A stretch of 64,000 bases of DNA from Pecten maximus (Eukaryota), in the NCBI RefSeq assembly GCF_902652985.1, contig NC_047028.1, positions 10,416,001-10,480,000 on the forward strand, in the 5' to 3' direction. Of the stretch, positions 4,004 to 24,800 are shown in pieces. Numbering within the stretch: the stretch's first letter is position 1; every line of letters starts with the position of its first letter. The notes under the pieces were generated by a model that was not told where the DNA came from, did no database searches, and was given only the letters and a program-made list of their open reading frames with translations. Position numbers and translations under genes: made by a program.

Positions 4004-7000
4004 CTTGGCGACTGATTGTCCCATACTGTCTCTCTTCAGCAAAGTTGGCTAAAAGTTTACAATCACCAAGATCACCCTTCTCTGTTGTATCAACACAGGC
4101 TCTGTAAGTAAAACAGTAATATTTGTCACTAGGCTCTGTAAGTAAAACATTAATATTTGTCACTATGTACAGTAAGACTAGCCCAATACATAAGGAATGT
4201 AGATCTTAATGACATATTAAGCAATTGGCTACGAACTAAAGACAATCTGATTAGCAGATTTTATTGATACAAGCATATTCTTAATCATTTCAGGTTTGCA
4301 TGTACATGTATACTCGTCCTGTATTATATGAATGTTTAAATAATTACTTCAGTTGCAATGAAGCAAATTAAACATTGACCCCACAACGTGTCTCTGATAA
4401 TTAATAACTAGAAACTGATACCACTAATTGACAGGAGCCATATAGCAAAATGGTGAAATGGAAGGAACATGATAATAATGGCACATATTTGGGGAAAATA
4501 CCAAGAGGGCTTAGAAAACCCTAAAAAACTTAAGTAGATTGTTGCACATGACCCTGTCCCTCCCAGAAAAGATTAAACATTAAACAGACAACACTTACTC
4601 ATGCATGTCAACCTCTGAAACCTCCAATGAGGGAGATCTCCCTCATTCCACATCCAAAATGAGGGAGAAAGTGCGTGAAAAAAATCGCGACATTTTTGTT
4701 GCATTTAGGTGATGTTCCTCATGAGCTTGTGCAGGTGTAAATTACCTTGGGCTACATTTGATATTAAAGTTTGACTACAATGCATATGGTTAATTGTAAG
4801 GAATAATAATAATAAAAAAAAAATTTTTTTAAAAAGATTAATTCTTTTAAAAAATGTTTTTAGAAATTTCATAGCGAGGAACTGTATTTAGTGAATTAAT
4901 AATGATGTAGTCACTTGAAATTTGCAACCAGTATACAAATGTAACTACTTATCTCCTGATTTTTTTTTTTTTTGTTCTGAAATATATCTAAATGTATTTA
5001 TCAAATTATCTCCCTTCCTTTCTCAAATAATAATTACACAGTGATTTATTAATTTTTGTTTTACTACTAGTTCCATTGTGACATGAAACAAACTTCTTAA
5101 AAAGTGTTTTTGTTTTTTTTTCTGACCCAAATTGAAATCCGGATTTTTGTGGCAGTTTACGACTTTATATTAGTATTGTCCAATTAAAGATGGCGGCAGT
5201 ACAAACGCTGGTACTGACAGCTACGATTAAGAAAGGCATTATTGGCTTTCATGTGAGTAAATCTTGTTGACAGATATTACCAGTGTTTTTTCTTAAAGAG
5301 ATGTATCCTAGTTGTAATCACAAAATTAACTGACCGTGTCAAATGAAGCCACATGGGTTATAATGTATGCCAGTCGGCAGGCACGCATGCATGGACTTGG
5401 TGACCGGTGACCAACTCCCCTCTCACCAAGCCCCAGGCCAGGGCAGCTACACAGGTGGTGGGGGTGTTTTGTTTACATAATCAGTTTAGGGTCGAAGTGT
5501 CTGAGATTTCCGGGGTTTTATGATTCTGTTCAAATCCGGGAGAAATTTAACCCCGATTCGGGAACTGTACCAAATCGGGATTTAGGGGAAATTTTAATGA
5601 TTTTCCGGGCACTTCCCGCGTAATCCGGGATGGTTGACACCTATGCTTACTAATTATTATCTGAACCATGTAAAACGATATTACATTAATTATTAAAACA
5701 CTAATTATCATTATCTAAACCACTACCTCCAGGTATTGCCATCGTGAAATACAACACAGTCAAACACTGGTCCACAGTCATGGTATTTTTTGTCTAAGCT
5801 TGTCAAGAGGTCCACTCTGGCCTGCAGGTCTTCCTTCACAAGTTTTTCTTCCTAATCACAAATCATACAATCATACAATGGAGTACATACTAATTTTATT
5901 AGCTAGTGTATCCAGATATACACAATAGTATGTAAAAATTAAACAACAATAATTGATCAGAAGTATTACACTAAAACTTCGCTATAACAAATTCCATTCC
6001 AAATGACTTGTTACAAATGAAATTCATTATAGAGTTACATGTATTTCAAATTCATTTACTTCTTAATTTACATTTTACATCTTTTTAAAGCAATCCGTGA
6101 TTTTGACATGTTTCTTTACCAATACTTCCTCAAAGTATGATTTGAATGCCAACAGGCTACTGAACAGTTCGAGTGGGGCGTTCTTGGTTGAACAAATATA
6201 TCTACGCAGAGTTTCAACACCTTGATATGCTGTTTCAGTTTTAACAGATTCATACTTAATAATGTGTTGATTGATTCCCCTTTTTGGCCCAAGGTTTCAC
6301 TTTGAAATAAACAAGGCTAAAATTGACACTTTCGGAAACATGGGCCAGGAAAACTTGTATTAGATGCAAGTATTTACTTGATGGGACCACAAAATGACTT
6401 TGTATCAAAAGAAAATCTGCTATATAGCGAATTTGTAATATGTTTCTAATGGAGTTATAAGCAAAGAGAAAAGCCAAAACCAGGGATTTGAATTTACTTC
6501 ATAACAAGGAGAAATTTGTATCAAACAGGTTCTTCTGAAGAAAGTTTTACTGTATCTTATATCTCCTGGGATATATCTGGTAGTTTACCTGGGGATACAA
6601 TTTATCCTTTGTAAAAATGTGATAAACCTGGCAAATAAGTCTACCTGACTAGGACTTGAGTTTTTAGCATCAAATTCTTCAAGTTTGCGAGAAGCCTCTG
6701 CCAGAGCAGCCCGATGAGGAGGATCCCATGACTGTTCCCTACGCTCCTTCACCACTCGGTCTTGCAGGCGTTTCGGGTACAGATCAAAGAGATTCTTGGC
6801 TCCGATGTGATACTTTCCTGAAGGGTTTGTCCAGGAAGATGGGATCTAAAATAGATAACATAGATGTCATCAATCAAAACATTAAATTTGTAGTAAAATG
6901 TACATGTGACTCTATCATAATAATGAATATTTTGTCAGTTACAAATATCTTACATATATTTTTTTTACTTTGGGATACTGTAATTAAAAGCCTATTACGA

Positions 7001-8977
7001 GGTAAATGATTCAAGAAGCAATTGACCAATGATATATCAGTTTACATAAAATGAGTACCCAGACTGGCTTCGTAATACCTTTAACTTTCGTCCTGTGACA
7101 CCAGTTATTTCCCCATCTTCTGGCTCTACCACTTTGGAAGTGTCTACGTCGCCAGAACCAGTGGCATCAATTACATCTACAATCTTTGGACTGCCATTTG
7201 TCGTAACCTGAAATGTATGGGTAAATTTTAAGCAGTGAAAACTCAGGGGTTATATATATGTATAAGGCGAGAATGGCCTAGATCATCAATTGAGAACTAA
7301 ATAAAGCAAGTGTTTCTGCTTTTTGAAAGAATTGATGTCTCAATTAGCGCTATATAAATATCATAGAAGTCAGAAAGATGTTATATATGTCAGTTTTGTA
7401 TGTACCAAAAGCTTAAGGGACAGTTACACAAAAAGTTTTTGTAACAAAATCCCATATTTTCATATATATACAATACATCATATAATGGAGCACCCTATAG
7501 CTGCAGTAGTTGCATACTAGAAATGTGGCTGTCAAATCGTCCAACATCTAGAAATGACTATTAAAGGAAATCTAATTCTAAAACTCATAAAGGTTAAGAA
7601 ATACAAATTAATCTATAGATCTTGTTCGAGACAAATTTTAAAAAGAGTGAGACTTCAAAGACAGAGACACCAAAGTTATCTACAGAAATAACCATGGAAA
7701 GGTAATGACTTGTAAGTAATTACTGGTAATTATATATATATAATAATATAACAATTCTGTGCTCCCAATTAAAACTTTTAAAAAAAAGTTTGTTTGTCTT
7801 GAATATTGAAGATAATGGACTTAAAATTGGGAGACGAGTATCACAAACTGAAGTTCATAAATTAAATCAATATCATTACAGTTCAAACAGTGTTAACACC
7901 TTAAAATAAGCCATTCTGCTCCTAATGCCTTGTAGTGGTGCATTTGAATAAAAATACAATACCTGTTGAACATAATTATCAATAAGCGATAAATCAATTA
8001 TTTTGATTGCATTTGTTGTTTTGATTTTGTTGTTGGATAAAAGATGATAAATTCAGAAAGAGGTATAGATGATACATACAGTTCGGTCAAAAAACAATCC
8101 TTCTTTACATGATTAATATCTGAAAGGACTATAAAGATCCAGTAGGATATCATATCCTCCTGTTCTAATTACTGAATCTTTTTTTAAATCTGCTATCTAC
8201 TGTCACTGCCCTAAAATCGCTCTCCGTCTCTATATAGATAATCAGTTTGGCTTTCTTGGAATCAATCAATCTCTTTCTGTTTCATAACATTATCTTCAAC
8301 AAAGTTGTTCCGTACCATCTAGAAATAGAATTAGAAGTTCGTCTATGTTTGCTAAATGTGTTGTTTTCATTTTAAATTTGCATTTGACCTTCACATTTCT
8401 AATTACAATCTGGAATTCCTTTTATGCTTTTTATAGTGTAGGCTGCCATATATTTATCAAAGGAAAGTTCAACATAACTTTTCCAGAGGTGTATAAAAAG
8501 CACGTTTTAATGATTATGGGTGTAAAGATGATGCGATTTTGATCACAACGTATGCGACTGTTTTAGGGCGAATTGACCCTCACAAAACTCGTCCCCGTTA
8601 CAACACCGAGTAATAAACACGATTACACAATACCATTCATCAGTATAAATATTGAATTAAATTTCGATGGTTTCTGAGATTATAGAAGCGATTTACGCCA
8701 ATAATTGGACAGTTTACAACCAAATAAACTGAGAAAGGGAACTAATAGAATCAGCTGATTCATGACAAGTGTGTGCTTGTGAAAATATTTGGACAATAGT
8801 TAAAAATCTTAGTACTTGTAATCCCGGAGCACCAGGATCGACTCCTGTATCGAGAATCGCAATTAGAACACCCTTTCCATCGTAATCTGGGTATTTCGTT
8901 AAGAAAGCTGCAGCCCCAGTCTCTTTCTTGGGAAGGATTCCTTCAATGGGAAAATCAGCTTCGACAGTAGACGCCAT
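4004..8977 (-). CDS. TPP2: Tripeptidyl-peptidase II, 5' part (coding exons 8977-8816, 7207-7079, 6845-6645, 5851-5727, 4101-4004; gene continues left, beyond this span)
   Basis: All introns are GT-AG with consistent phases. Spliced product reads [54 protein letters not shown] / [24 protein letters not shown]... / [15 protein letters not shown]... / [10 protein letters not shown]...[16 protein letters not shown] / [11 protein letters not shown]..., which is the recognisable TPP2 N-terminus with the subtilisin catalytic Asp in ILDTG. No further exon was found in 1-4003. Confidence 0.96.
4600..5645. mobile_element. Non-autonomous DNA transposon (hAT-like) with imperfect 14-bp TIRs and a 6-bp TSD, in TPP2 intron 4
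   Basis: Left end CATGCATGTCAACC; right end GGTTGACACCTATG (reverse complement matches 11/14). CTTACT flanks both sides (4594-4599 and 5646-5651). Subterminal CGGGA-like repeats near the right end. Confidence 0.7.
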
Positions 8978-14339: not shown

Positions 14340-14878
14340 TGATCTTTTTTTTAAATGATGCGAATGATATTGCCATAGATTTCTCAAAGATAATATCAGT
14401 TTGGATGGAATAGTCCTATATCCTATATTCTGTATGAGACATTTTGTTTTGTAACACACATGTCATGAAGCCGCAAAAGATCTACCCGGATATGCTGCCA
14501 TTAACACTGGATTGTCAGCATCGCCGATATGAAATGGCGGTCATCAATTCAGACACACCGCTAATAACTGTATGGTCAACAATACAAAAATCGCTTTAAA
14601 GCAAGACGGATAAATGTATGGGAAACTGATTGCAACCAAGGAGACACCAATGATAAGAATCAATCTGAACTAAAGAGATGCTGTATCCTTGATACTGTGG
14701 GGGTTACGTTCACTGCCTCTCACTGCACACCTGAGCTGTCATAAACGTAACTCCTGGATTACTGATGACGTTGTTGTTGTGGATGCAGGAATATTAATTT
14801 CAAAAAATGGTTAGTACATGAAGGAAAATGGAGATATCCAGACTTCTCGAACAGCTTGCGGTGCGCTGATTAAATATA

Positions 14879-15715
14879 TGTAGCGTTCCACTCGGGTATA
14901 CACGAGACGCTATTAATAAAAGTTCGAGATGGAAGCTGACTACGGCAGGGACAACTATGACACCAGACTAAAGTTCACATAATTTTATTTACACATCTAT
15001 GAAGTTCAACATATCATACATTAGGTTCACATAAATCCCATTCAGACGTACACATGTACACTTCGCATCGAATATACACTGTTTCACATAATATCCACGG
15101 GTGATAACTTCCAGTAGTATTATGTATTCCATAGTGAGACTAACACACTTAGTACATCCCATAAAAGTGTAAGTTAAATCCAAGTATCAATATCTTATCA
15201 CAAGTTGCGTGGAGTATTTCCCAAAGTAAAACTTTATCTCCTTGTTTTCGTCACTTTCACCCCTTATATACCACTTTCATACTGCATTTTCATTGGCTAG
15301 CATCTGCTCCTCCGACCTATATTTGGCTCCTCTGTCGCTCCTCACTCACGCTGATTGGTTAAGACCTGCTCCTCTCGCTCCTCCGACCTACTTACAGCTC
15401 GCTCCTCACTCTCTCTGATTGGTTAAACACTAGTTATAAATAGGACCTGTTACTAAATTTACACGGGCCTTATGCAACCTGTCAATCAGGTTGGGCCCTA
15501 ATACACAGCTCCACGATGCTACAGAACGTAAACAACTCCTTATAAGGAAAACTAGCTCCCTGCTGCCCCGTATATACACACACATATATAGACCCTATAC
15601 ACACCCTATGTAATACATATACATAGCCCACTACTATATTACCCTAAACAATAATACAATTAAACTACATTTCTAATTTAATAAACATAAGCGTGAAATA
15701 TATTTCCACGCTACA
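14879..15715 (-). repeat. 3' LTR (837 bp)
   Basis: Matches 20826-21662 except for one substitution seen by eye (15300 G vs 21247 A). Minus-strand AATAAA at 14984-14989. Confidence 0.97.
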
Positions 15716-15727
15716 CTACCCCCAACT
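15716..15727 (-). other. Polypurine tract
   Basis: AGTTGGGGGTAG directly abuts the 3' LTR on the minus strand. Confidence 0.85.
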
Positions 15728-16193
15728 TTCTAAGTTTTGTCTCCGACAAAAGTTAAAGAGATAACAATCAAATCCTGTCTATTTCAGAAAAATGTTCAAT
15801 ATACATGTATAAGCATTGAAAACGGTTTACATTATCAACTCACTCGCACAATAATATTTCAATCACAAATGATTCAAATAAAATACAGCGTCAATCATAA
15901 TGTTATGAACACAAAACACGATGTAAATCCAGTGAGAAAATATCACAACTAGTAGAAAAATGTTCCACATGATGATAACGTAATGTTTGCTTTTATGGTT
16001 AAAGTCAATCGTTAACACAGTGTTTATCATATCCGGACCAAATATCGGAGAATGTACCGTTATCCAAATAAAGTTCATTATTCATGTACCAGAGTCGTTT
16101 AAATGGTCACACAATAAAATCCATTGAATGTCACGTTATTCAAAAGTCACAGAATGTCTTTTCAGCATCTAAAAGTCTCATTAATAAATCCAT

Positions 16194-16688
16194 TCAGACA
16201 TCGAATTTTGTGTATTGGCGCGTCCCCATATTGGCAAAATGTTGTGGTATTTCATCCAATGTCTCCCGTACCAATCCCGGAAAGTCGACGAACTCAGGGT
16301 CCACACCTTCCGAGTAACCAATGGATGTATCCCGTCGGACTTCCTGGACTCCATCTGTAAATGTGGTTGTGGTCCGAGTCATGGATATCATGATGGTTTG
16401 TGTACTGACATTGCACACAAACACATTACTGGTTCCGGTCATAGGTTCATGTTCCACCTCGTCCTCGCTGACGTCACTGTATGCTGGGGCTCGCTCTGCC
16501 GTCTGCTTTACCTCCACCTCTTCTTCGCTGACGTCACTGTACCCTAGATCTGCATGTAGTTGATCAGCCGGCCAACTACGGTCTGGACATTCCGGCATAC
16601 CATCACCAGAAAAACATTGTTCTGTTGGCATGGTACAGGTAGGCACGCTAAATGAGTTCCACAGTTCATCAATATCCCAATCATTCCT
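16194..16688 (-). CDS. Acidic 164-aa open stretch continuing the pol frame after a single TAA
   Basis: The codons after the pol stop read RNDWDIDELWNSFSVPTCTMP... and run without a stop into the 150-aa track ORF 16194..16646. Contains a duplicated YSDVSE(E/D)EVE motif and NVSTQT. Confidence 0.55.
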   Translation of the reverse strand, partial: RNDWDIDELWNSFSVPTCTMPTEQCFSGDGMPECPDRSWPADQLHADLGYSDVSEEEVEVKQTAERAPAYSDVSEDEVEHEPMTGTSNVFVCNVSTQTIMISMTRTTTTFTDGVQEVRRDTSIGYSEGVDPEFVDFPGLVRETLDEIPQHFANMGTRQYTKFDV

Positions 16689-19445
16689 TTAGTCAGAGCA
16701 GGGTTGGCGTGTGGGACCACAACAGTGATTTCTCTGGTGCCTCTTCAGGTTGCTGCCTCTGGAAAATGTTTTCCCACAGTCTTCACATACTTTCAAAGAT
16801 TTGGTGTTCTCTTCATGATTCCTTTTCTCCGGTTTCCTGTTACTATTCCGGTCACCGGAGTCCACACTAAATGTACTATCCACAGTCACATCCGGTTTGA
16901 AAAGTATCTTTATGCTTTCAATACTATCCACTTCCGGTTGATCGATTATGTCCGCTTCAGGTTTGTCTATTATTACTTCCGGAATGTCCTGTAATTTCGA
17001 CATATTCGTATCGATAGCCTCGGATTGTTCAATATCCAACGGCATTTGGCATTGTTTACACGTTGCGGCTTTATCATTAATTAATCTAGACATGGCGTCG
17101 GCGTTGCAGTGACGTTTCCCAGGCCTATGTTGTATCTTAAAATCAAATGGACTCAGTCGCTGTATCCACCTGCAAATCTGTCCATCTGGCTCCTTGAATT
17201 TGTACAGCCAAGTCAACGATCCATGATCCGTCCGTAACAAGAATTCACGTCCAATCAGATAGTGCCGGAAGTATTTCACAAAGAAAACTACGGCCAACAT
17301 CTCTTTCCGGGTCACACAATAATTACGCTCAGCTTTACTGAGAGACCTACTGGCGTACGCAATAACCACTTCCTGGCCTTCCTGGACTTGTGACAACACT
17401 GCTCCTATAGCGTAATTGCTGGCATCCGTGTCAAGTATGAATTTACCCCCGTTTACGTCTGGATAGCTCAAAATAGGAGTTGATGTTAACCGTTCCTTCA
17501 GCTCATTAAAAGCTGTAGAGTGTTCTTCCGTCCACATCCATGATTTACCTTTCTTGGTAAGGTCGTGTAGACACTTCGCTATTAATGCGAAGTTTTTAAC
17601 AAACTTCCTGTAATAGGACGCTAATCCTAGGAAAGTTCTTAACTCTGAAATGGTCTCTGGCGCTTTCATCTTCGATATTGCCTCTATTTTTGAAGGGTCA
17701 GTTCGGACGCCATCCTGTGACACCACATGCCCCAGGAACGTCACTTCTCTGCAGAAAAAGTGACACTTTTTGGCCTTCAACTTTAAATTGGCACCGTCAA
17801 GCCTTTCCAAGACTGCCGTCAAGTTGTCCAAATGTTGTCCGAAATCCTTTCCGTACACAATAATATCATCCAGATAAAGCACTGCAATGTTCCACTGTAA
17901 TCCACTCAGCGCTTTCTCTATTATTCTGGAGAAAGTGGCCGGGGCGTTGGTCAAACCAAACGCCATCACTTTATATTGGTACAATCCACCTCGTGGCGTA
18001 GCGAAGGCGGTCAGCTTTTTGTCGTCCTCGCACATAGGCACCTGATGATAAGCCATATTGAGATCCAGAGATGAAAACCATTTAGCTCCACTCAACGCGT
18101 CCAGATTGTCGTCAATACGACTAATGGGGTAGGCATCCTTAATAGTTTTCTCATTAAGTCGCCGGTAATCCACACACACTCTCCAGGAATTGTCCCGCTT
18201 TTGGACCAAACCAAGTTGTGAACTCCATGGACTCTCCGATCGCTCTATCAATCCTTGTTGTTCTAACTTGGCTATTTCTTCATCCAAGATTTTACGTTTG
18301 TATATAGGCACTCTCCGTGGTGCCTCCTTAAATGGTACGGGATCCTTTAATTTTATAGTATGCTCGCCCAACGTAGTTCTTCCCATCTTTCCCTTAGGAT
18401 CCGCAAATGTGGTCTGGTGTTTTATCAAGAACTGCCTGAACTGCGCACGTTCCTCAGAATTCAGGTTAGTACATCCACGTTCGTACATTTCCATCAAATA
18501 TTCCGGTAACATGTCATCGTGCTCGGCAATGTTATCAACGTCTGAAACCGTCCTGCCGATATCTTTCACCGGTACAAAAACAGCCATGTTGGTCTCTTTC
18601 TTCACTGTGACTGGCTCGTCACCAGGGTTAAATAATCTCGTATATAGCGATTTGTGTGAAGTATCAACAAGAACATTCGCTAAGGCTAATCCGTGAGAAT
18701 GAATAAACACTTTCTCAGGTACGAGAACTCCAACATGTGAGTTAGTTGTTCTGGTCAGTCTTGATCTCACCACCATTTCGTGTTTAGCAGGTATAGTTAC
18801 AGTGTCCATACTGACCACTCTGCTGCTTTTAAATCCGTTTTCGTTGACAGATTCATCTTTAGGTTTTCTGTCCGTGATGATAAACATCCAGTTGTCATAG
18901 TCCCATTGACATTTAAATTGAGTTATGAAGTCCTGGCCCAATAAATTTGTTTTAATATTGGCCACAAAAACTCTAAAGTTTACACTAATATCTCCAAAAG
19001 TCAAACACATAATAGTAGTCCCTAACACCGACAACTCGTTTCCATCGGCTGTCTCGAACTTGGAACGAGCAGGCTCCAATATAGGACGATCCTTTCCATA
19101 AATGCTATAGTAGGTATCTTCGGTGATAAAAGTCCGTCTCGCTCCGGTGTCGACTTTCCAGATTAAAGGCGTACCTTCCACCATACCACGCACTTTCATA
19201 GCAGCATCGCACTTCACTCTCACTTCGAGTAAGTTATTAATCTCTCCCTGTCTGCAGTTTCCCGCGGAAGAAATAGCACTACAAAACTCTGTTTCTGTAT
19301 CCCTGTTTTCGGCGTCACTTAGTACAATTTCTTTTTGTCTCAAGGTTCCGCTGGGTACAGTTGAATTTTGTTTCACTCCTGTATTAGGCCTCTGTTCCTG
19401 CTCGGCGGGCGCATGGCCTACTGCTCCAGCCGGGACTCGTTTAAC
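16689..19445 (-). CDS. pol: Pol in the -1 frame relative to gag: aspartic protease, reverse transcriptase, RNase H, C-terminal C2H2 zinc finger; no integrase
   Basis: VDTGA (protease); RVCVDYRRLN, LDLNMAYHQV and YLDD (RT); DTDAS, KEMLAVV, TDH and NADAMSR (RNase H); CEDCGKTFSRGSNLKRHQRNH. The frame is open from just after a TGA at 19454-19452. The track start (GTG at 19376) is probably not a real initiation site. Confidence 0.93.
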   Translation of the reverse strand, partial: VKRVPAGAVGHAPAEQEQRPNTGVKQNSTVPSGTLRQKEIVLSDAENRDTETEFCSAISSAGNCRQGEINNLLEVRVKCDAAMKVRGMVEGTPLIWKVDTGARRTFITEDTYYSIYGKDRPILEPARSKFETADGNELSVLGTTIMCLTFGDISVNFRVFVANIKTNLLGQDFITQFKCQWDYDNWMFIITDRKPKDESVNENGFKSSRVVSMDTVTIPAKHEMVVRSRLTRTTNSHVGVLVPEKVFIHSHGLALANVLVDTSHKSLYTRLFNPGDEPVTVKKETNMAVFVPVKDIGRTVSDVDNIAEHDDMLPEYLMEMYERGCTNLNSEERAQFRQFLIKHQTTFADPKGKMGRTTLGEHTIKLKDPVPFKEAPRRVPIYKRKILDEEIAKLEQQGLIERSESPWSSQLGLVQKRDNSWRVCVDYRRLNEKTIKDAYPISRIDDNLDALSGAKWFSSLDLNMAYHQVPMCEDDKKLTAFATPRGGLYQYKVMAFGLTNAPATFSRIIEKALSGLQWNIAVLYLDDIIVYGKDFGQHLDNLTAVLERLDGANLKLKAKKCHFFCREVTFLGHVVSQDGVRTDPSKIEAISKMKAPETISELRTFLGLASYYRKFVKNFALIAKCLHDLTKKGKSWMWTEEHSTAFNELKERLTSTPILSYPDVNGGKFILDTDASNYAIGAVLSQVQEGQEVVIAYASRSLSKAERNYCVTRKEMLAVVFFVKYFRHYLIGREFLLRTDHGSLTWLYKFKEPDGQICRWIQRLSPFDFKIQHRPGKRHCNADAMSRLINDKAATCKQCQMPLDIEQSEAIDTNMSKLQDIPEVIIDKPEADIIDQPEVDSIESIKILFKPDVTVDSTFSVDSGDRNSNRKPEKRNHEENTKSLKVCEDCGKTFSRGSNLKRHQRNHCCGPTRQPCSD
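19385..19445 (-). promoter_or_regulatory. Predicted programmed -1 ribosomal frameshift signal (G_UUA_AAC plus H-type pseudoknot)
   Basis: Heptamer at 19445-19439 in gag codon register; 6-nt spacer; stem 1 pairs 19432-19422 with 19413-19403; loop UAGGCC pairs with GGCCUA at 19390-19385. Confidence 0.75.
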
Positions 19446-20725
19446 GACAGTTCATTTGTTTGATTGGAGGTCGAATTTCTCTTAACATCCGGGCACTTAT
19501 TTCTCAGATGTTCTTCACTACCACACTCAAAGCACTTCAGTGGTTTCGGCGGTTTGGTGGTACGTTTCCCGGTACTTCCGTTTCCGGGTTGCTTGGCTGA
19601 CGACATAATTTGCACATTGTACACTGAGCGCTTCTGGTCCTTAGCGTTCCGTTTTTCTCCCAACAGAATACATTCCTCCTGCATGGCAAATGTCACCGCC
19701 TCCTGTAATGTCTTGGGGCGCATGCGTTTAACCGCTAAACGGAAATTATCGGAAGAATGACAGTTATTAAGGAAAGTTTTTAAACTGCTCTCCTCCACAT
19801 ATTCTCTGTTGTTGGGGTATGCTCGTCTGTACAAGTCTTCCATAGTCTGTGCGAAATCTCTGTACGATTCGTCTGTTTTCCGTTTCCTTAATTTAGCCTC
19901 CGCTACATAACTTTCTTTCATGGATCTGTGTCCAAACCGGTCGTCCATTTTATTCTTTAATGTATCCCAGTCCTGCTTAACGGTATTATTCAGACCGTAA
20001 GCATACACCTCGGCTTGACCACGCAGTACAGTGAAAAATATACGCAAAGTCCGGGCAGGTGTCCAGCCATTCAGGTCAGCTACATTTTCGAAATACCGGA
20101 TATATTCACTCCATATATCTTTACCGGTACCACTGAATGTCCGCTTCAACGGAACTTGCTGACCCCTTAAACTGATATCGTTCCGGGTGGACTGCTCTCC
20201 ATATTCACGACTGGGCGTCTCCAATACATCTAATCCCTGAGACATATTTTGCACCATGTCTATCATCATGGGATTCCGTAACAACTTCACTATGAGCGAA
20301 AATGTGATTAACAGGAGTATCACAAGAGTTCCCAAAACTATAAACTCCTTAGTGAAACAGACGATGACGTGGTTGGGGTATCTGTGGTACAGAATACCAA
20401 CACAACTTCCCAAACACACCAACACAAGAATCCATTTCAAAATAAATCCTTTGTATTGATTCCCCGTTATGCGTGAATTAGTGGTTCTCGCCTGTGAAGT
20501 AGTCTCACATCCATAACTACTCCCCGGAGTCCTTTGCCCCACATGCGGAATATCGTTCACATCCGGTGTATCCACATCTGGACTTCTTAAAGTCCGAGCC
20601 GGGCTACTTGACCCATCGCTATTCCCGACTTCACTCTCATCGAAATCAAAACTTAAATTTCGACGCACACGCGGTGAAGTAAGCCCACGCTGAGATGGTC
20701 TCCTTGGTGTGTCCGGAATATCCAT
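19418..20725 (-). CDS. gag: Gag, 435 aa: disordered N-terminus, two predicted transmembrane helices, Gypsy capsid domain, CCHC zinc knuckle
   Basis: Capsid-type motif FSGTGKDIWSEYIRYFENVADLNGW...LRGQA...RFG; knuckle CFECGSEEHLRNKC (CX2CX4HX4C); hydrophobic runs at about aa 93-113 and 128-149. Confidence 0.93.
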   Translation of the reverse strand: MDIPDTPRRPSQRGLTSPRVRRNLSFDFDESEVGNSDGSSSPARTLRSPDVDTPDVNDIPHVGQRTPGSSYGCETTSQARTTNSRITGNQYKGFILKWILVLVCLGSCVGILYHRYPNHVIVCFTKEFIVLGTLVILLLITFSLIVKLLRNPMMIDMVQNMSQGLDVLETPSREYGEQSTRNDISLRGQQVPLKRTFSGTGKDIWSEYIRYFENVADLNGWTPARTLRIFFTVLRGQAEVYAYGLNNTVKQDWDTLKNKMDDRFGHRSMKESYVAEAKLRKRKTDESYRDFAQTMEDLYRRAYPNNREYVEESSLKTFLNNCHSSDNFRLAVKRMRPKTLQEAVTFAMQEECILLGEKRNAKDQKRSVYNVQIMSSAKQPGNGSTGKRTTKPPKPLKCFECGSEEHLRNKCPDVKRNSTSNQTNELSLNESRLEQ

Positions 20726-20805: not shown

Positions 20806-20823
20806 TCCCCATCGCTGCCACCA
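20806..20823 (-). other. Primer binding site, probably tRNA-Leu
   Basis: TGGTGGCAGCGATGGGGA lies 2 nt inside the 5' LTR and is near-complementary to the metazoan tRNA-Leu(AAG/UAG) 3' end ...AUCCCACCGCUGCCACCA. Confidence 0.85.
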
Positions 20824-20825
20824 AT

Positions 20826-21662
20826 TGTAGCGTTCCACTCGGGTATACACGAGACGCTATTAATAAAAGTTCGAGATGGAAGCTGACTACGGCAGGGACA
20901 ACTATGACACCAGACTAAAGTTCACATAATTTTATTTACACATCTATGAAGTTCAACATATCATACATTAGGTTCACATAAATCCCATTCAGACGTACAC
21001 ATGTACACTTCGCATCGAATATACACTGTTTCACATAATATCCACGGGTGATAACTTCCAGTAGTATTATGTATTCCATAGTGAGACTAACACACTTAGT
21101 ACATCCCATAAAAGTGTAAGTTAAATCCAAGTATCAATATCTTATCACAAGTTGCGTGGAGTATTTCCCAAAGTAAAACTTTATCTCCTTGTTTTCGTCA
21201 CTTTCACCCCTTATATACCACTTTCATACTGCATTTTCATTGGCTAACATCTGCTCCTCCGACCTATATTTGGCTCCTCTGTCGCTCCTCACTCACGCTG
21301 ATTGGTTAAGACCTGCTCCTCTCGCTCCTCCGACCTACTTACAGCTCGCTCCTCACTCTCTCTGATTGGTTAAACACTAGTTATAAATAGGACCTGTTAC
21401 TAAATTTACACGGGCCTTATGCAACCTGTCAATCAGGTTGGGCCCTAATACACAGCTCCACGATGCTACAGAACGTAAACAACTCCTTATAAGGAAAACT
21501 AGCTCCCTGCTGCCCCGTATATACACACACATATATAGACCCTATACACACCCTATGTAATACATATACATAGCCCACTACTATATTACCCTAAACAATA
21601 ATACAATTAAACTACATTTCTAATTTAATAAACATAAGCGTGAAATATATTTCCACGCTACA
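20826..21662 (-). repeat. 5' LTR (837 bp) with U3 promoter elements
   Basis: Minus-strand TATATAA at 21217-21211, preceded by three CCAAT boxes (ATTGG on plus near 21239, 21301 and 21365). Confidence 0.97.
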
Positions 21663-21885
21663 TATACAACACGAACGATACAGATCTGTACACCGTTTAC
21701 CTGTCAGTATTGTAACAGAGAACGACACGTAGATTACACAGTTTCATGTTTCGATATTAGGATGAGAGAATATCAAAGTCGATATATTCATGACATGCAG
21801 CATTACCAGACACGCATGCGTAATGATGGAAAGACATCAAGACAGCAGTTATATAATAAGCGGGTAGATAATATTCCACAGAAAC

Positions 21886-24800
21886 ATGGATGTCCCCGTC
21901 GTTCCAATACCTGACCCCCACCTCGCTGACTACGTCGTTATCGCCATCTTCCTCTGTGTCTGTTTGGGAATCGGCGTTTACTATGGTTACCAGACCAGCA
22001 AAAACCCTTCTGTGGAAAACTATTTCTTCGGGAACCGACGTCTGTCGATAGCACCGGTGGCTCTGTCCCTTTTTGTAACGTTTATATCCGCGATTTCGGT
22101 GATGGGTATACCAGCCGAGGTATATGCTTTTGGGATCCGGATTATCTACGGTGGAGTCTCCAATCTGTTATCCATGATTATAGCCAATTTCACTATTGTC
22201 CCTGTTCTATATCCACTGAAACTGACCAGTACATACCAGGTAAAGTTTTTCGTTAAAACATATTAATATAAGCTTGCCTGCCAAATAAGTTAAAGGAATA
22301 TTTGAAAGGTTATAATTGTACAATTCCATTACTTTTAATTTCACTTTTTTTTTATTTGTTATGGATAAGTGGTTAGACATCGCATAACGCCTATTCAGAT
22401 AACAAAATCCTTTGATACTTTAGACAATACAAACTTTTAAGACTATATTAAGTGTAACATGTACAAAATGTATTGTCTTATTACTGATTTTAACCGCACT
22501 CTACTAATAAGGGTAATGATGATTTATGTACACGTATATAAATACTGAATACCAAACTTTATAGATACACGGCGTCACAGAGGAAACTGCTGTTATTGGT
22601 ATCAAAGTGTGGTCCTCGAAGTTTTCAATGTATTACAAATAGCTAAACCGGCAATTAAAGTTCATGTAATTTTCTCAAAATACAAATGCACATACTACTT
22701 AACATTGAACTTGCCTTGTATATAAACTTGCCTTGTATATAAACTTGCCTTGTACATAAACTTGCCTTGTATATAAACTTGCGCTGTATATAAACTTGCG
22801 CTGTATATAAACTTGCCTTGTATATAAACTTGCCTTGTATATAAACTTGCGCTGTATATAAACTTGCCTTGTATATAAACTTGCCTTGTACATAAACTTG
22901 CCTTGTACATAAACTTGCCTTGTATATAAACTTGCCTTGTATATAAACTTGCCTTGTATATAAACTTGCCTTGTATATAAACTTGCCTTGTATATAAACT
23001 TGCGCTGTATATAAACTTGCCTTGTACATAAACTTGCCTTGTACATAAACTTGCCTTGTACATAAACTTGCCTTGTATATAAACTTGCCTTGTATATAAA
23101 CTTGCCTTGTATATAAACTTGCGCTGTATATAAACTTGCCTTGTATATAAACTTGCCTTGTATATAAACTTGCCTTGTATATAAACTTGCGCTGTATATA
23201 AACTTGCCTTGTATATAAACTTGCCTTGTATATAAACTTGCCTTGTATATAAACTTGCCTTGTATATAAACTTGCCTTGTATATAAACTTGCGCTGTATA
23301 TAAACTTGCCTTGTATATAAACTTGCCTTGTATATAAACTTGCCTTGTATATAAACTTGCGCTGTATATAAACTTGCCTTGTATATAAACTTGCCTTGTA
23401 TATAAACTTGCGCTGTATATAAACTTGCCTTGTATATAAACTTGCCTTGTACATAAACTTGCCTTGTATATAAACTTGCCTTGTATATAAACTTGCCTTG
23501 TATATAAACTTGCGCTGTATATAAGCTTGCGCTGTATATAAACTTGCGCTGTATATAAACTTGCGCTGTATATAAACTTGCGCTGTATATAAACTTGCCT
23601 TGTATATAAACTTGCCTTGTATATAAACTTGCCTTGTACATAAACTTGCCTTGTATATAAACTTGCCTTGTATATAAACTTGCGCTGTATATAAACTTGC
23701 GCTGTATATAAACTTGCGCTGTATATAAACTTGCGCTGTATATAAACTTGCGCTGTATATAAACTTGCGCTGTATATAAACTTGCGCTGTATATAAACTT
23801 GCGCTGTATATAAACTTGCGCTGTATATAAACTTGCCTTGTATATAAACTTGCGCTGTATATAAACTTGCCTTGTATATAAACTTGCGCTGTATATAAAC
23901 TTGCGCTGTATGTAAACTTGCCTTGTATATAAACTTGCGCTGTATATAAACTTGCCTTGTATATAAACTTGCCTTGTATATAAACTTGCGTTTTATATAA
24001 ACTTGCCTTGTATATAAACTTGCGCTGTATATAAACTTGCCTTGTATATAAACTTGCCTTGTATATAAACTTGCCTTGTATATAAACTTGCCTTGTATAT
24101 AAACTTGCGCTGTATATAAACTTGCGCTGTATATAAACTTGCGCTGTATATAAACTTGCGCTGTATATAAACTTGCGCTGTATATAAACTTGCGCTGTAT
24201 ATAAACTTGCGCTGTATATAAACTTGCCTTGTATATAAACTTGCGCTGTATATAAACTTGCCTTGTATATAAACTTGCGCTGTATATAAACTTGCGCTGT
24301 ATATAAACTTGCCTTGTATATAAACTTGCGCTGTATATAAACTTGCCTTGTATATAAACTTGCCTTGTATATAAACTTGCGTTTTATATAAACTTGCGCT
24401 GTATATAAACTTGCGCTGTATATAAACTTTCGTTGCATATAAACTTTCGTTGCATATAAACTTTCGTTGCATATAAACTATCGTTGCATATAAACTTTCG
24501 CTGTATATAAATTTTCGTTGTACATAAACTTTCTTTGTATATAAACTTTCGTTGTATATAACTTTTCGTTGTTTTCATGGTTGCTATGGAACCCAGAATA
24601 TAAATACAACAAATATTGTATCTATTATCGTTGCATCGGCTATTGGCTAACCACGAACGTATATATATACAACATTTTAAGGAACTGCAAGACGATTTAT
24701 ATACTTTATACTGAGCTAGTTAATGAAATCCATTTTGATCAAGACAATTGGATTGTCTAATTGGTGCCATCATGATCTCAACAGACACAGCTAACAGGTA

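What the first reader, a model, noticed from the sequence alone, without database searches (positions are those of the whole stretch)
16689..17105. Pol lacks integrase and ends in a C2H2 zinc finger, yet the element is freshly and precisely integrated
Seen: after the RNase H end (NADAMSRL, about 17105-17083) come CKQC, an acidic linker and a classical finger CEDC-X12-HQRNH (16787-16725), then a stop. No HHCC, DD35E or GPY/F motif was seen here or between PR and RT, so this is not a Gmr1-type domain order. The LTRs are 836/837 identical with TG..CA ends and a 4-bp TSD. Known: such ends and TSDs are made by a DDE integrase. Inference: either an in-frame deletion occurred soon after insertion, or this is a semi-autonomous lineage that makes its own particles and cDNA and borrows integrase from a helper, with the zinc finger possibly acting as a nucleic-acid or chromatin tether.
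Basis: partly seen in the sequence, partly recalled or inferred. Interest (0 to 1): 0.8.

Follow-up and report, generated by a model that had tools for sequence, protein, structure and literature searches.

The report
Integrase-deleted copy of a scallop retrotransposon
This is a one-off internal-deletion copy of an ordinary integrase-bearing Ty3/gypsy retrotransposon of the king scallop. The "zinc finger at the end of Pol" is a piece of the element's own third gene, fused on by the deletion, so it is not a new integrase-less design.

Summary
The 6,784-bp element (LTRs 14879-15715 and 20826-21662, 836/837 identical, TG..CA ends, TATA duplication) encodes Gag and an 895-aa Pol with PR, RT and RNase H. 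It has no integrase, and Pol ends in one C2H2 finger.

The genome is Pecten maximus, by exact assembly size. It holds three 8.5-kb copies of the same family, 98-99% identical. Their Pol continues into a normal integrase (H2C2, rve, SH3/GPY-F). A separate 235-aa ORF3 follows, with two C2H2 fingers and an acidic tail.

The window copy lacks about 1.72 kb between two GAAAC microhomologies. That joins the RNase H-integrase linker in frame to ORF3 just before finger 2. A private GAA>TAA change then ends the frame.

This junction occurs once in the assembly. Contigs of two runs contain it; two other runs show only the full-length form. So it is a private deletion derivative, not a finger-bearing lineage.

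Two side results are more interesting:
- A different integrase deletion is shared by at least 6 insertions; three of these are complete and each has its own target-site duplication. That sublineage was mobilised in trans.
- ORF3 is a conserved accessory gene (dN/dS 0.15) and is also found in related elements outside this genome.

The parts
14875..14878 (.). Target-site duplication TATA (left)
   Evidence: The same 4 bases lie at 21663-21666.
14879..15715 (-). 3' LTR (element runs on the minus strand), 837 bp, TG..CA ends
   Evidence: There is 1 mismatch to the other LTR.
15716..15731 (-). Putative polypurine tract abutting the 3' LTR
   Evidence: Read from the sequence. Assigned by position only.
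16194..16688 (-). Distal two thirds of ORF3 (acidic YSDVSE repeats and the conserved C-terminal domain), in frame behind the private TAA
   Evidence: It aligns to ORF3 of L033 and L032, which read GAA (Glu) where the window has TAA.
16689..16691 (-). Private nonsense codon TAA (GAA in other copies)
   Evidence: In one search, contigs of runs X5 and X6 read C at 16691, while X1 and X2 match the window.
16725..16787 (-). C2H2 zinc finger = finger 2 of ORF3
   Evidence: Pfam zf-C2H2. ORF3 of the full-length copies has two fingers.
16817..16821 (-). Deletion junction. Both parental sites read GAAAC; the window reads GAATC.
   Evidence: About 1,717 bp of the full-length element (L031 element coordinates about 4866-6583) are missing here.
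16822..17081 (-). Acidic RNase H-integrase linker retained from Pol (includes CKQC at 17049-17060)
   Evidence: Alignment A1. It is identical to the full-length Pol up to ..NRKPEKR.
17145..17534 (-). RNase H domain
   Evidence: Pfam RT_RNaseH and RT_RNaseH_2, aa 615-744.
17724..18206 (-). Reverse transcriptase domain
   Evidence: Pfam RVT_1, aa 391-551, E 5e-35.
18921..19190 (-). Aspartic protease domain
   Evidence: Pfam gag-asp_proteas, aa 63-152.
16689..19376 (-). Chimeric pol-ORF3 reading frame, 895 aa
19418..20725 (-). gag, 435 aa, open
   Evidence: The CCHC knuckle is weak (E 0.004).
20806..20823 (-). Putative primer-binding site (TGG... starting 2 nt inside the 5' LTR boundary)
   Evidence: Sequence. 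The cognate tRNA was not identified.
20826..21662 (-). 5' LTR
21663..21666 (.). Target-site duplication TATA (right)

Best explanation
The element is a singleton internal-deletion derivative of an 8.5-kb Ty3/gypsy family of Pecten maximus. The family's layout is LTR-gag-pol(PR-RT-RH-IN)-ORF3-LTR.

About 1.72 kb was lost between two copies of the pentamer GAAAC. One copy sits in the RH-IN linker and the other between the two fingers of ORF3. The loss covers all of integrase, the pol stop and the first 29 codons of ORF3, including finger 1.

The break happens to be in frame, so Pol now reads into ORF3 finger 2. A private GAA>TAA change stops it 9 codons after the finger.

The clean ends and the TATA duplication were made by a DDE integrase that this copy does not encode. 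Most likely (inferred, about 2:1) the deletion arose by template switching during reverse transcription, in a particle built by a complete relative, and the deleted cDNA was integrated by that particle's integrase. Less likely it is a genomic deletion after insertion. The fused finger has no evolved role in this copy.
For: - Three copies 98-99% identical to the window copy (L031, L032, L033) are 8,529-8,611 bp. Their Pol has 1,394-1,400 aa with Integrase_H2C2 (about 1e-16), rve (about 2e-12) and Integrase_p58_C/SH3. A downstream ORF carries two zf-C2H2.
- The window aligns to them colinearly except for one gap, element coordinates about 4866-6583. Both parental sites share GAAAC.
- ORF3 in L033 and L032 reads ...PCSDERNDW... 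where the window reads PCSD*RNDW.
- A genome-wide search with 801 bp across the junction found only the window locus contiguous; all 24 candidates were scored.
- A 307-nt contig in runs X1 and X2 spans 16630-16936 with no difference. Contigs of X5 and X6 break at 16819/16821 and continue into full-length sequence on both sides.
- Trans-mobilisation operates in this family. A different deletion (element 4802-6737) with one identical junction occurs at 6 loci. The three complete copies have different flanks and their own 4-bp duplications. This joint is present in all four runs laid.
- Two further independent integrase deletions also have microhomology at the joint (L038; the L024-L026 subfamily). 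This is the pattern attributed to aberrant strand transfer in retroviral proviruses (PMC12657518, abstract only).
Against: - Nothing here dates the deletion relative to integration. A post-insertion microhomology-mediated deletion gives the same sequence.
- The junction carries one base (T) found in neither parent, which fits either route.
- X1 and X2 may come from the individual used for the assembly, so they are not independent proof.
- The assembly (918 Mb) is smaller than the estimated genome (PMC7191990), so further copies with this junction could be unassembled.
Confidence: 0.9

Rival explanations
1. Post-insertion deletion. A complete 8.5-kb copy integrated here with its own integrase, then lost 1.72 kb in the genome through replication slippage or end joining at GAAAC. 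This shares the derivative reading of the main explanation and differs only in timing.
For: There is microhomology at the joint, plus one untemplated or mutated base. The junction is unique to one locus. No helper is needed.
Against: The insertion is very young (1 LTR mismatch in 837). That leaves little time for a 1.7-kb genomic deletion. In contrast, four independent integrase deletions exist in this small family. One of them clearly transposed after the deletion, and a second occurs at three loci not checked for independence.
Confidence: 0.3
2. One reading: a semi-autonomous integrase-less lineage whose Pol carries a C-terminal C2H2 finger as a nucleic-acid or chromatin tether and borrows integrase from a helper.
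For: gag is open, and pol is open up to the private TAA that ends the fused frame. The insertion is fresh. Integrase-less relatives are mobilised in this genome.
Against: The junction occurs once. The finger is half of a two-finger ORF3 that is separate from pol in all full-length copies and in relatives from other samples. The frame ends at a private nonsense codon. The integrase-less class that did multiply has lost both fingers.
Confidence: 0.03
3. Assembly artefact: a collapse or mis-join between the RH end and ORF3 of a full-length copy.
For: The family is repetitive. Contigs of X5 and X6 show only the full-length form at both sides of the joint.
Against: Contigs of X1 and X2 carry the joint together with the private TAA, with no mismatch over 307 nt. 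The assembly was built from long PacBio reads (PMC7191990). The LTRs and the target-site duplication are coherent.
Confidence: 0.03

Closest known systems
Ty3/gypsy (Metaviridae) LTR retrotransposons of marine invertebrates
   Same: Full-length copies have gag, then PR-RT-RH-IN with H2C2, rve and a GPY/F-type SH3. LTRs end in TG..CA and insertions have 4-bp duplications. The best database relatives, 56-59% identical, are unnamed Pol proteins from environmental and invertebrate assemblies; named hits include an oyster protein.
   Different: The window copy lacks integrase. The family carries an extra two-finger ORF3. The clade (for example Mag A/B/C) was not assigned because no reference set was at hand.
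Deletion-derivative, trans-mobilised LTR elements such as mouse IAP I-delta-1, ETn/MusD, HERV-K(HML-2) type 1 and barley BARE2 (recalled from memory, not checked here)
   Same: They share LTRs and cis signals with an autonomous partner. An internal deletion can create a fusion reading frame. They are mobilised by the partner's proteins. The 6-copy deletion class of this family behaves this way.
   Different: The window's own junction is a singleton, so mobilisation after the deletion is not shown for it. Here the part lost is integrase, while gag, PR and RT-RH are kept.
Defective retroviral proviruses with single internal deletions from aberrant strand transfer (PMC12657518)
   Same: One internal deletion with short homology at the joint, inside an otherwise intact, properly integrated provirus.
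   Different: That work concerns HIV-1. No mechanism was tested here.
CERV of the C. elegans Ty3/gypsy element Cer1 (PMC10309623)
   Same: An element-encoded accessory protein is specified downstream of pol, where env would lie. CERV has a Cys-rich, possibly zinc-binding loop and acts on the element's own RNA.
   Different: No sequence similarity was detected, though no direct comparison was made. ORF3 has classical C2H2 fingers plus an acidic tail. Its expression route and function are unknown.

Membership tests
Ty3/gypsy LTR retrotransposon | Pol domain order PR-RT-RH-IN | tested here: met
   Met for the family: L031, L032 and L033 Pol have RVT_1, RT_RNaseH, Integrase_H2C2, rve and Integrase_p58_C in that order. 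The window copy keeps PR-RT-RH only.
Ty3/gypsy LTR retrotransposon | LTRs with TG..CA ends and a short target-site duplication | tested here: met
   All 8 complete copies have 4-bp duplications.
Ty3/gypsy LTR retrotransposon | Gag with CCHC nucleocapsid knuckle | tested here: inconclusive
   zf-CCHC scores E 0.004 at 17.6 bits, below the cutoff of 20.8. The motif CFECGSEEHLRNKC is visible in the sequence.
Autonomous element | Encodes its own DDE integrase | tested here: not met
   No rve or H2C2 hit by Pfam. tblastn with the family's integrase finds nothing in the window.
Propagating non-autonomous (deletion-derivative) lineage | Several independent insertions share the same deletion junction | tested here: not met
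   The window junction is present once. The feature is met for another class, deletion 4802-6737, found at 6 loci.
Gmr1-type gypsy (integrase upstream of RT) | Integrase between PR and RT | tested here: not met
   There is no integrase anywhere in the window copy. In full-length copies it follows RNase H.
Chromovirus | Chromodomain at the integrase C-terminus | tested here: not met
   No chromodomain hit in the full-length Pol at E up to 0.1.
Errantivirus / env-bearing gypsy | Third ORF encodes an envelope glycoprotein | tested here: not met
   ORF3 matches only C2H2-type finger families. The AlphaFold2 model shows two fingers, a long disordered acidic stretch and a small low-confidence beta/helix domain.
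Rev/CERV-like accessory regulator | Element-encoded nucleic-acid-binding protein needed for the element's own expression | not testable with these tools
   Only the position, the finger domains and purifying selection are shown (dN/dS 0.15).

The most novel reading that the evidence does not exclude
The finger comes from a previously undescribed, clade-wide accessory gene of a marine-invertebrate Ty3/gypsy lineage. ORF3 encodes two C2H2 fingers, acidic Ser-rich YSD[VI]SE[DE]E repeats and a small C-terminal domain. That is a transcription-factor-like layout, so it could activate the element's LTR, handle its RNA or guide integration.

In the scallop this family is now carried mostly by integrase-less derivatives (9 of about 12 internal copies) that parasitise three integrase-bearing copies.
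Probability: 0.45. Interest if true: 0.55.

Novelty: new member of a known kind. Interest (0 to 1): 0.33.

Why it matters
For the question asked, the result is deflationary. No new way of integrating without integrase is needed, and the Pol-finger fusion is an accident of one deletion.

What remains useful:
- It is a clean, datable example of how defective but well-integrated LTR copies arise and then spread in trans within a small, recently active family. LTR pairs differ at 0-5 of about 840 positions (plus one gap in L033).
- It points to a conserved zinc-finger accessory gene in a group of invertebrate gypsy elements. Surveys based on RT/RNase H do not mention it (PMC6238403 has no 'zinc finger' or 'ORF3').
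- It is a warning for annotation: gene callers would report this chimeric ORF as a novel RT-zinc-finger protein.

Tried and rejected
- **Splicing as the cause of the deletions:** rejected. None of the four joints has GT..AG borders.
- **A 24-nt direct repeat at the window joint**, suggested by BLAST overlap: on inspection only GAAAC is shared.
- **Database relatives of ORF3:** the word-index search gave one weak finger-only hit and the ESM Atlas gave nothing. Relatives were found only by walking from Pol homologues to their contigs.
- **AlphaFold2 of ORF3:** mean pLDDT 48. Only the fingers are modelled with any confidence, so no fold search was run.
- **tRNA for the primer-binding site:** the 14-mer occurs only in copies of the element and at one non-tRNA locus.
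- **Host origin of the fingers:** only generic C2H2 matches were found (E 1e-5 or worse), so no donor was identified.
- **Contigs of three Pol relatives from sample ERZ26168041:** these could not be read because the sample's file was too large. P0003 was not on record.
- **Not built:** L031 served only as a coordinate ruler.
Full report
**1. What is in the window**

The element lies on the minus strand.
- The two LTRs (14879-15715 and 20826-21662) are 837 bp and differ at one position. They begin TG and end CA, and they are flanked by TATA on both sides.
- gag (20725-19418, 435 aa) is open.
- The pol frame (19376-16689, 895 aa) has protease, RVT_1 (5e-35) and RT_RNaseH/RT_RNaseH_2 (about 1e-34). 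It has one zf-C2H2 at aa 863-884 (27.4 bits, above the Pfam cutoff) and no integrase family.
- tblastn with the integrase of this same family finds nothing in the 64-kb window.

**2. The genome and the family**

The window's assembly has 918,306,378 bases in 3,983 sequences. These are exactly the figures of the king scallop Pecten maximus assembly (PMC7191990).
- A search of that genome with 801 bp spanning the RNase H end and the finger found only the window locus contiguous.
- At three loci (C18:14.88 Mb, C16:34.7 Mb, C2:45.9 Mb) the two halves of the query lie about 1.72 kb apart.
- At six loci a stretch of the query itself is missing.
- The LTR has at least 40 near-identical copies.

**3. 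The full-length relatives**

The three long copies (L031, L032, L033; 8,529-8,611 bp between LTRs) are 98-99% identical to the window copy.
- Their pol frames have 1,394-1,400 aa. After the same PR-RT-RH they carry Integrase_H2C2 (about 1e-16), rve (about 2e-12) and Integrase_p58_C/SH3_Tf2-1.
- Alignment A1 shows the window Pol identical to them up to ...NSNRKPEKR, where it departs.
- About 27 nt after the pol stop, a separate frame starts. I call it ORF3. It is 235 aa from MDNHEH and is open in L033 at 6788-7495.
- ORF3 has two C2H2 fingers (zf-C2H2, about 1e-10), an acidic region with a duplicated YSDVSE[ED]EVE motif, and a C-terminal segment.

**4. What happened to the window copy**

In L031 element coordinates the window lacks about 4866-6583.
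- The upstream parent site reads ..AAAAGGAAACGTGGG.. (pol linker) and the downstream one ..GTGAGAAACATGAAG.. (ORF3, between the fingers).
- The window reads ..AAAAGGAATCATGAAG...
- The exchange therefore lies in the shared pentamer GAAAC. One base there (T) matches neither parent.
- The joint keeps the frame, which has a one-in-three chance. Pol continues as NHEENTKSLKV-CEDCGKTFSRGSNLKRHQRNH, which is ORF3 finger 2.
- Where L032 and L033 read PCSDERNDW, the window reads PCSD*RNDW: a GAA>TAA change. The rest of ORF3 follows in frame, 16688-16194.

So the 'Pol ending in a finger, then a stop' is a chimera of two genes, closed by a private nonsense mutation.

**5. Is the joint real?**

Logan contigs of four public runs of the same species label were laid on 15900-17700.
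- In X1 and X2 a 307-nt contig covers 16630-16936 without a difference. It carries the joint and the TAA.
- In X5 and X6 (other studies) contigs stop at 16819 and 16821. Their loose ends continue into the full-length pol linker and into ORF3 upstream sequence respectively. They read C at 16691, which gives GAA.
- X1 and X2 look like one data set filed twice and may be from the assembled animal. The result therefore shows that the joint exists in reads, not that it is widespread.
- Contigs cannot show absence.

**6. Other integrase-less copies**

The integrase probe finds only the three long copies plus one fragment; all 15 candidates were scored. Nine other copies with internal sequence lack integrase.

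| Class | Loci | Deletion (L031 element coordinates) | Joint |
|---|---|---|---|
| Window copy | 1 | about 4866-6583 | GAAAC microhomology |
| Shared class | 6 (L034-L037, L039, L040) | 4802-6737 | ..CCGGATATGAACTGT.., formed at GGAT within a 24-nt stretch about 80% alike |
| L038 | 1 | 4537-6140 | TAAGAT.CAACA |
| Diverged subfamily | 3 (L024-L026; 89% identical in RT) | about 4537-6503 | CAAC |

- One further copy, C3721, is cut by its contig end, so its class is unknown.
- In the shared class, the three complete copies have different flanks and their own duplications (TACA, AATA, TTTA). Their LTR pairs differ at 5, 4 and 0 positions.
- The shared-class joint is also present in all four runs laid. 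It has lost both fingers.
- That class is a single deletion that then multiplied, so it was mobilised in trans.
- None of the four joints has intron-like borders.
- Pairwise differences in a 1.2-kb pol segment are 1-8 among most copies, a star-like pattern of recent activity.
- None of the three integrase-bearing copies has gag, pol and ORF3 all open.

**7. How the window copy was integrated**

What is shown: it has integrase-made ends and does not encode integrase. Complete relatives exist, and integrase-less relatives are mobilised in this genome.

What is inferred: the deletion most likely arose by template switching during reverse transcription, inside a particle made by a complete copy. 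That is the route described for singly deleted HIV-1 proviruses (PMC12657518, abstract). Alternatively it came from a deleted parent not in the assembly, or by genomic deletion after insertion. I put pre-integration against post-integration at about 2:1. The reasons are that the insertion is very young and that the family shows repeated deletions of this kind, at least one of which demonstrably transposed. No data here settle the point.

**8. ORF3**

ORF3 is the real source of the finger and the most interesting by-product.
- Between the main family and the L024 subfamily it is 66% identical in protein. dN is 0.18, dS is 1.15 and dN/dS is 0.15, so it is under purifying selection.
- A sister family in the same genome (L042; Pol 62% identical) has a 172-aa ORF3 without fingers but with the same C-terminal motif (E 3e-5 in a single comparison).
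- Outside this genome, related elements (Pol 56-59% identical) show the same gene:
  - L045, from two Logan runs, has an ORF starting 10 nt after pol with two C2H2 fingers.
  - L047, from an ENA assembly, has the whole architecture of two fingers, YSDISEDEE and the C-terminal motif. It lies upstream of gag-pol.
  - Two contigs of another sample have 249- and 313-aa ORFs after pol with faint C2H2 hits.
- In the scallop genome, ORF3-like sequence is confined to these elements. Host genes match only as generic fingers.
- Direct protein searches found no named relative.
- The AlphaFold2 model is confident only for the fingers.
- Two fingers followed by an acidic tail is the layout of a small transcription factor. 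Activation of the LTR, RNA handling as for CERV of Cer1 (PMC10309623), or target choice are all possible. None was tested.
- I found no description of such a gene in two mollusc or metazoan gypsy surveys or by keyword search. That is a limited search.

**9. Verdict**

The finding is a correct reading of an accidental chimera. It is an ordinary defective derivative of a known kind of element and not an integrase-less design. The family around it has a multiplying integrase-less class and a conserved zinc-finger ORF3, and these deserve a modest follow-up.

Its proposed LC8-type TQT site was not tested. The TQT is kept in the close subfamily but not in the distant relatives.

Noticed in passing
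L033:6788-7495 (ORF3); window 16194-16816 holds its remnant: The family encodes a third gene. It has two C2H2 fingers, duplicated acidic YSDVSE[ED]EVE motifs and a conserved C-terminal segment. It is under purifying selection (dN/dS 0.15) and is present in related elements from other samples (L045, L047).
   Followed up: partly
L034, L035, L036, L037, L039, L040 (G000 C13, C5, C3687, C11, C18, C12): Six insertions share one identical integrase-and-finger deletion junction. Three complete ones have their own 4-bp duplications. This is a trans-mobilised sublineage that outnumbers the three integrase-bearing copies.
   Followed up: yes
L024, L025, L026 (G000 C8:45.43 Mb, C333, C8:45.36 Mb): A diverged subfamily (89% identical in RT, 70% in ORF3) has the RNase H end joined to the ORF3 start codon with only 8 bp between. 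No integrase-bearing copy of it turned up in the assembly.
   Followed up: partly
L042 (G000 C3573:3000-12999): A sister family with LTRs about 8 kb apart has gag, PR-RT-RH and integrase in separate frames. It also has a 172-aa ORF3 that lacks fingers but keeps the C-terminal motif of ORF3.
   Followed up: partly
window 16402-16968: One contig of run X5 joins 16402 to 16968 (skips 565 bases). This suggests yet another deletion variant in another animal. The support is a single contig with a 26-nt side.
   Followed up: no
window 17049-17060 and L042 Pol: The CKQC motif after RNase H is conserved between families that are only 62% identical (CKQCKLPLD). It belongs to the RH-IN linker, and its role is unknown.
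   Followed up: no
window 22640-23000: There is a tandem array of a 17-bp unit just outside the element.
   Followed up: no
window 19418-20725: Gag has a hydrophobic stretch (..ILKWILVLVCLGSCVGILY.. and ..IVLGTLVILLLITFSLIV..), which another note of this scan (s1-786398) flagged. It was not examined here.
   Followed up: no
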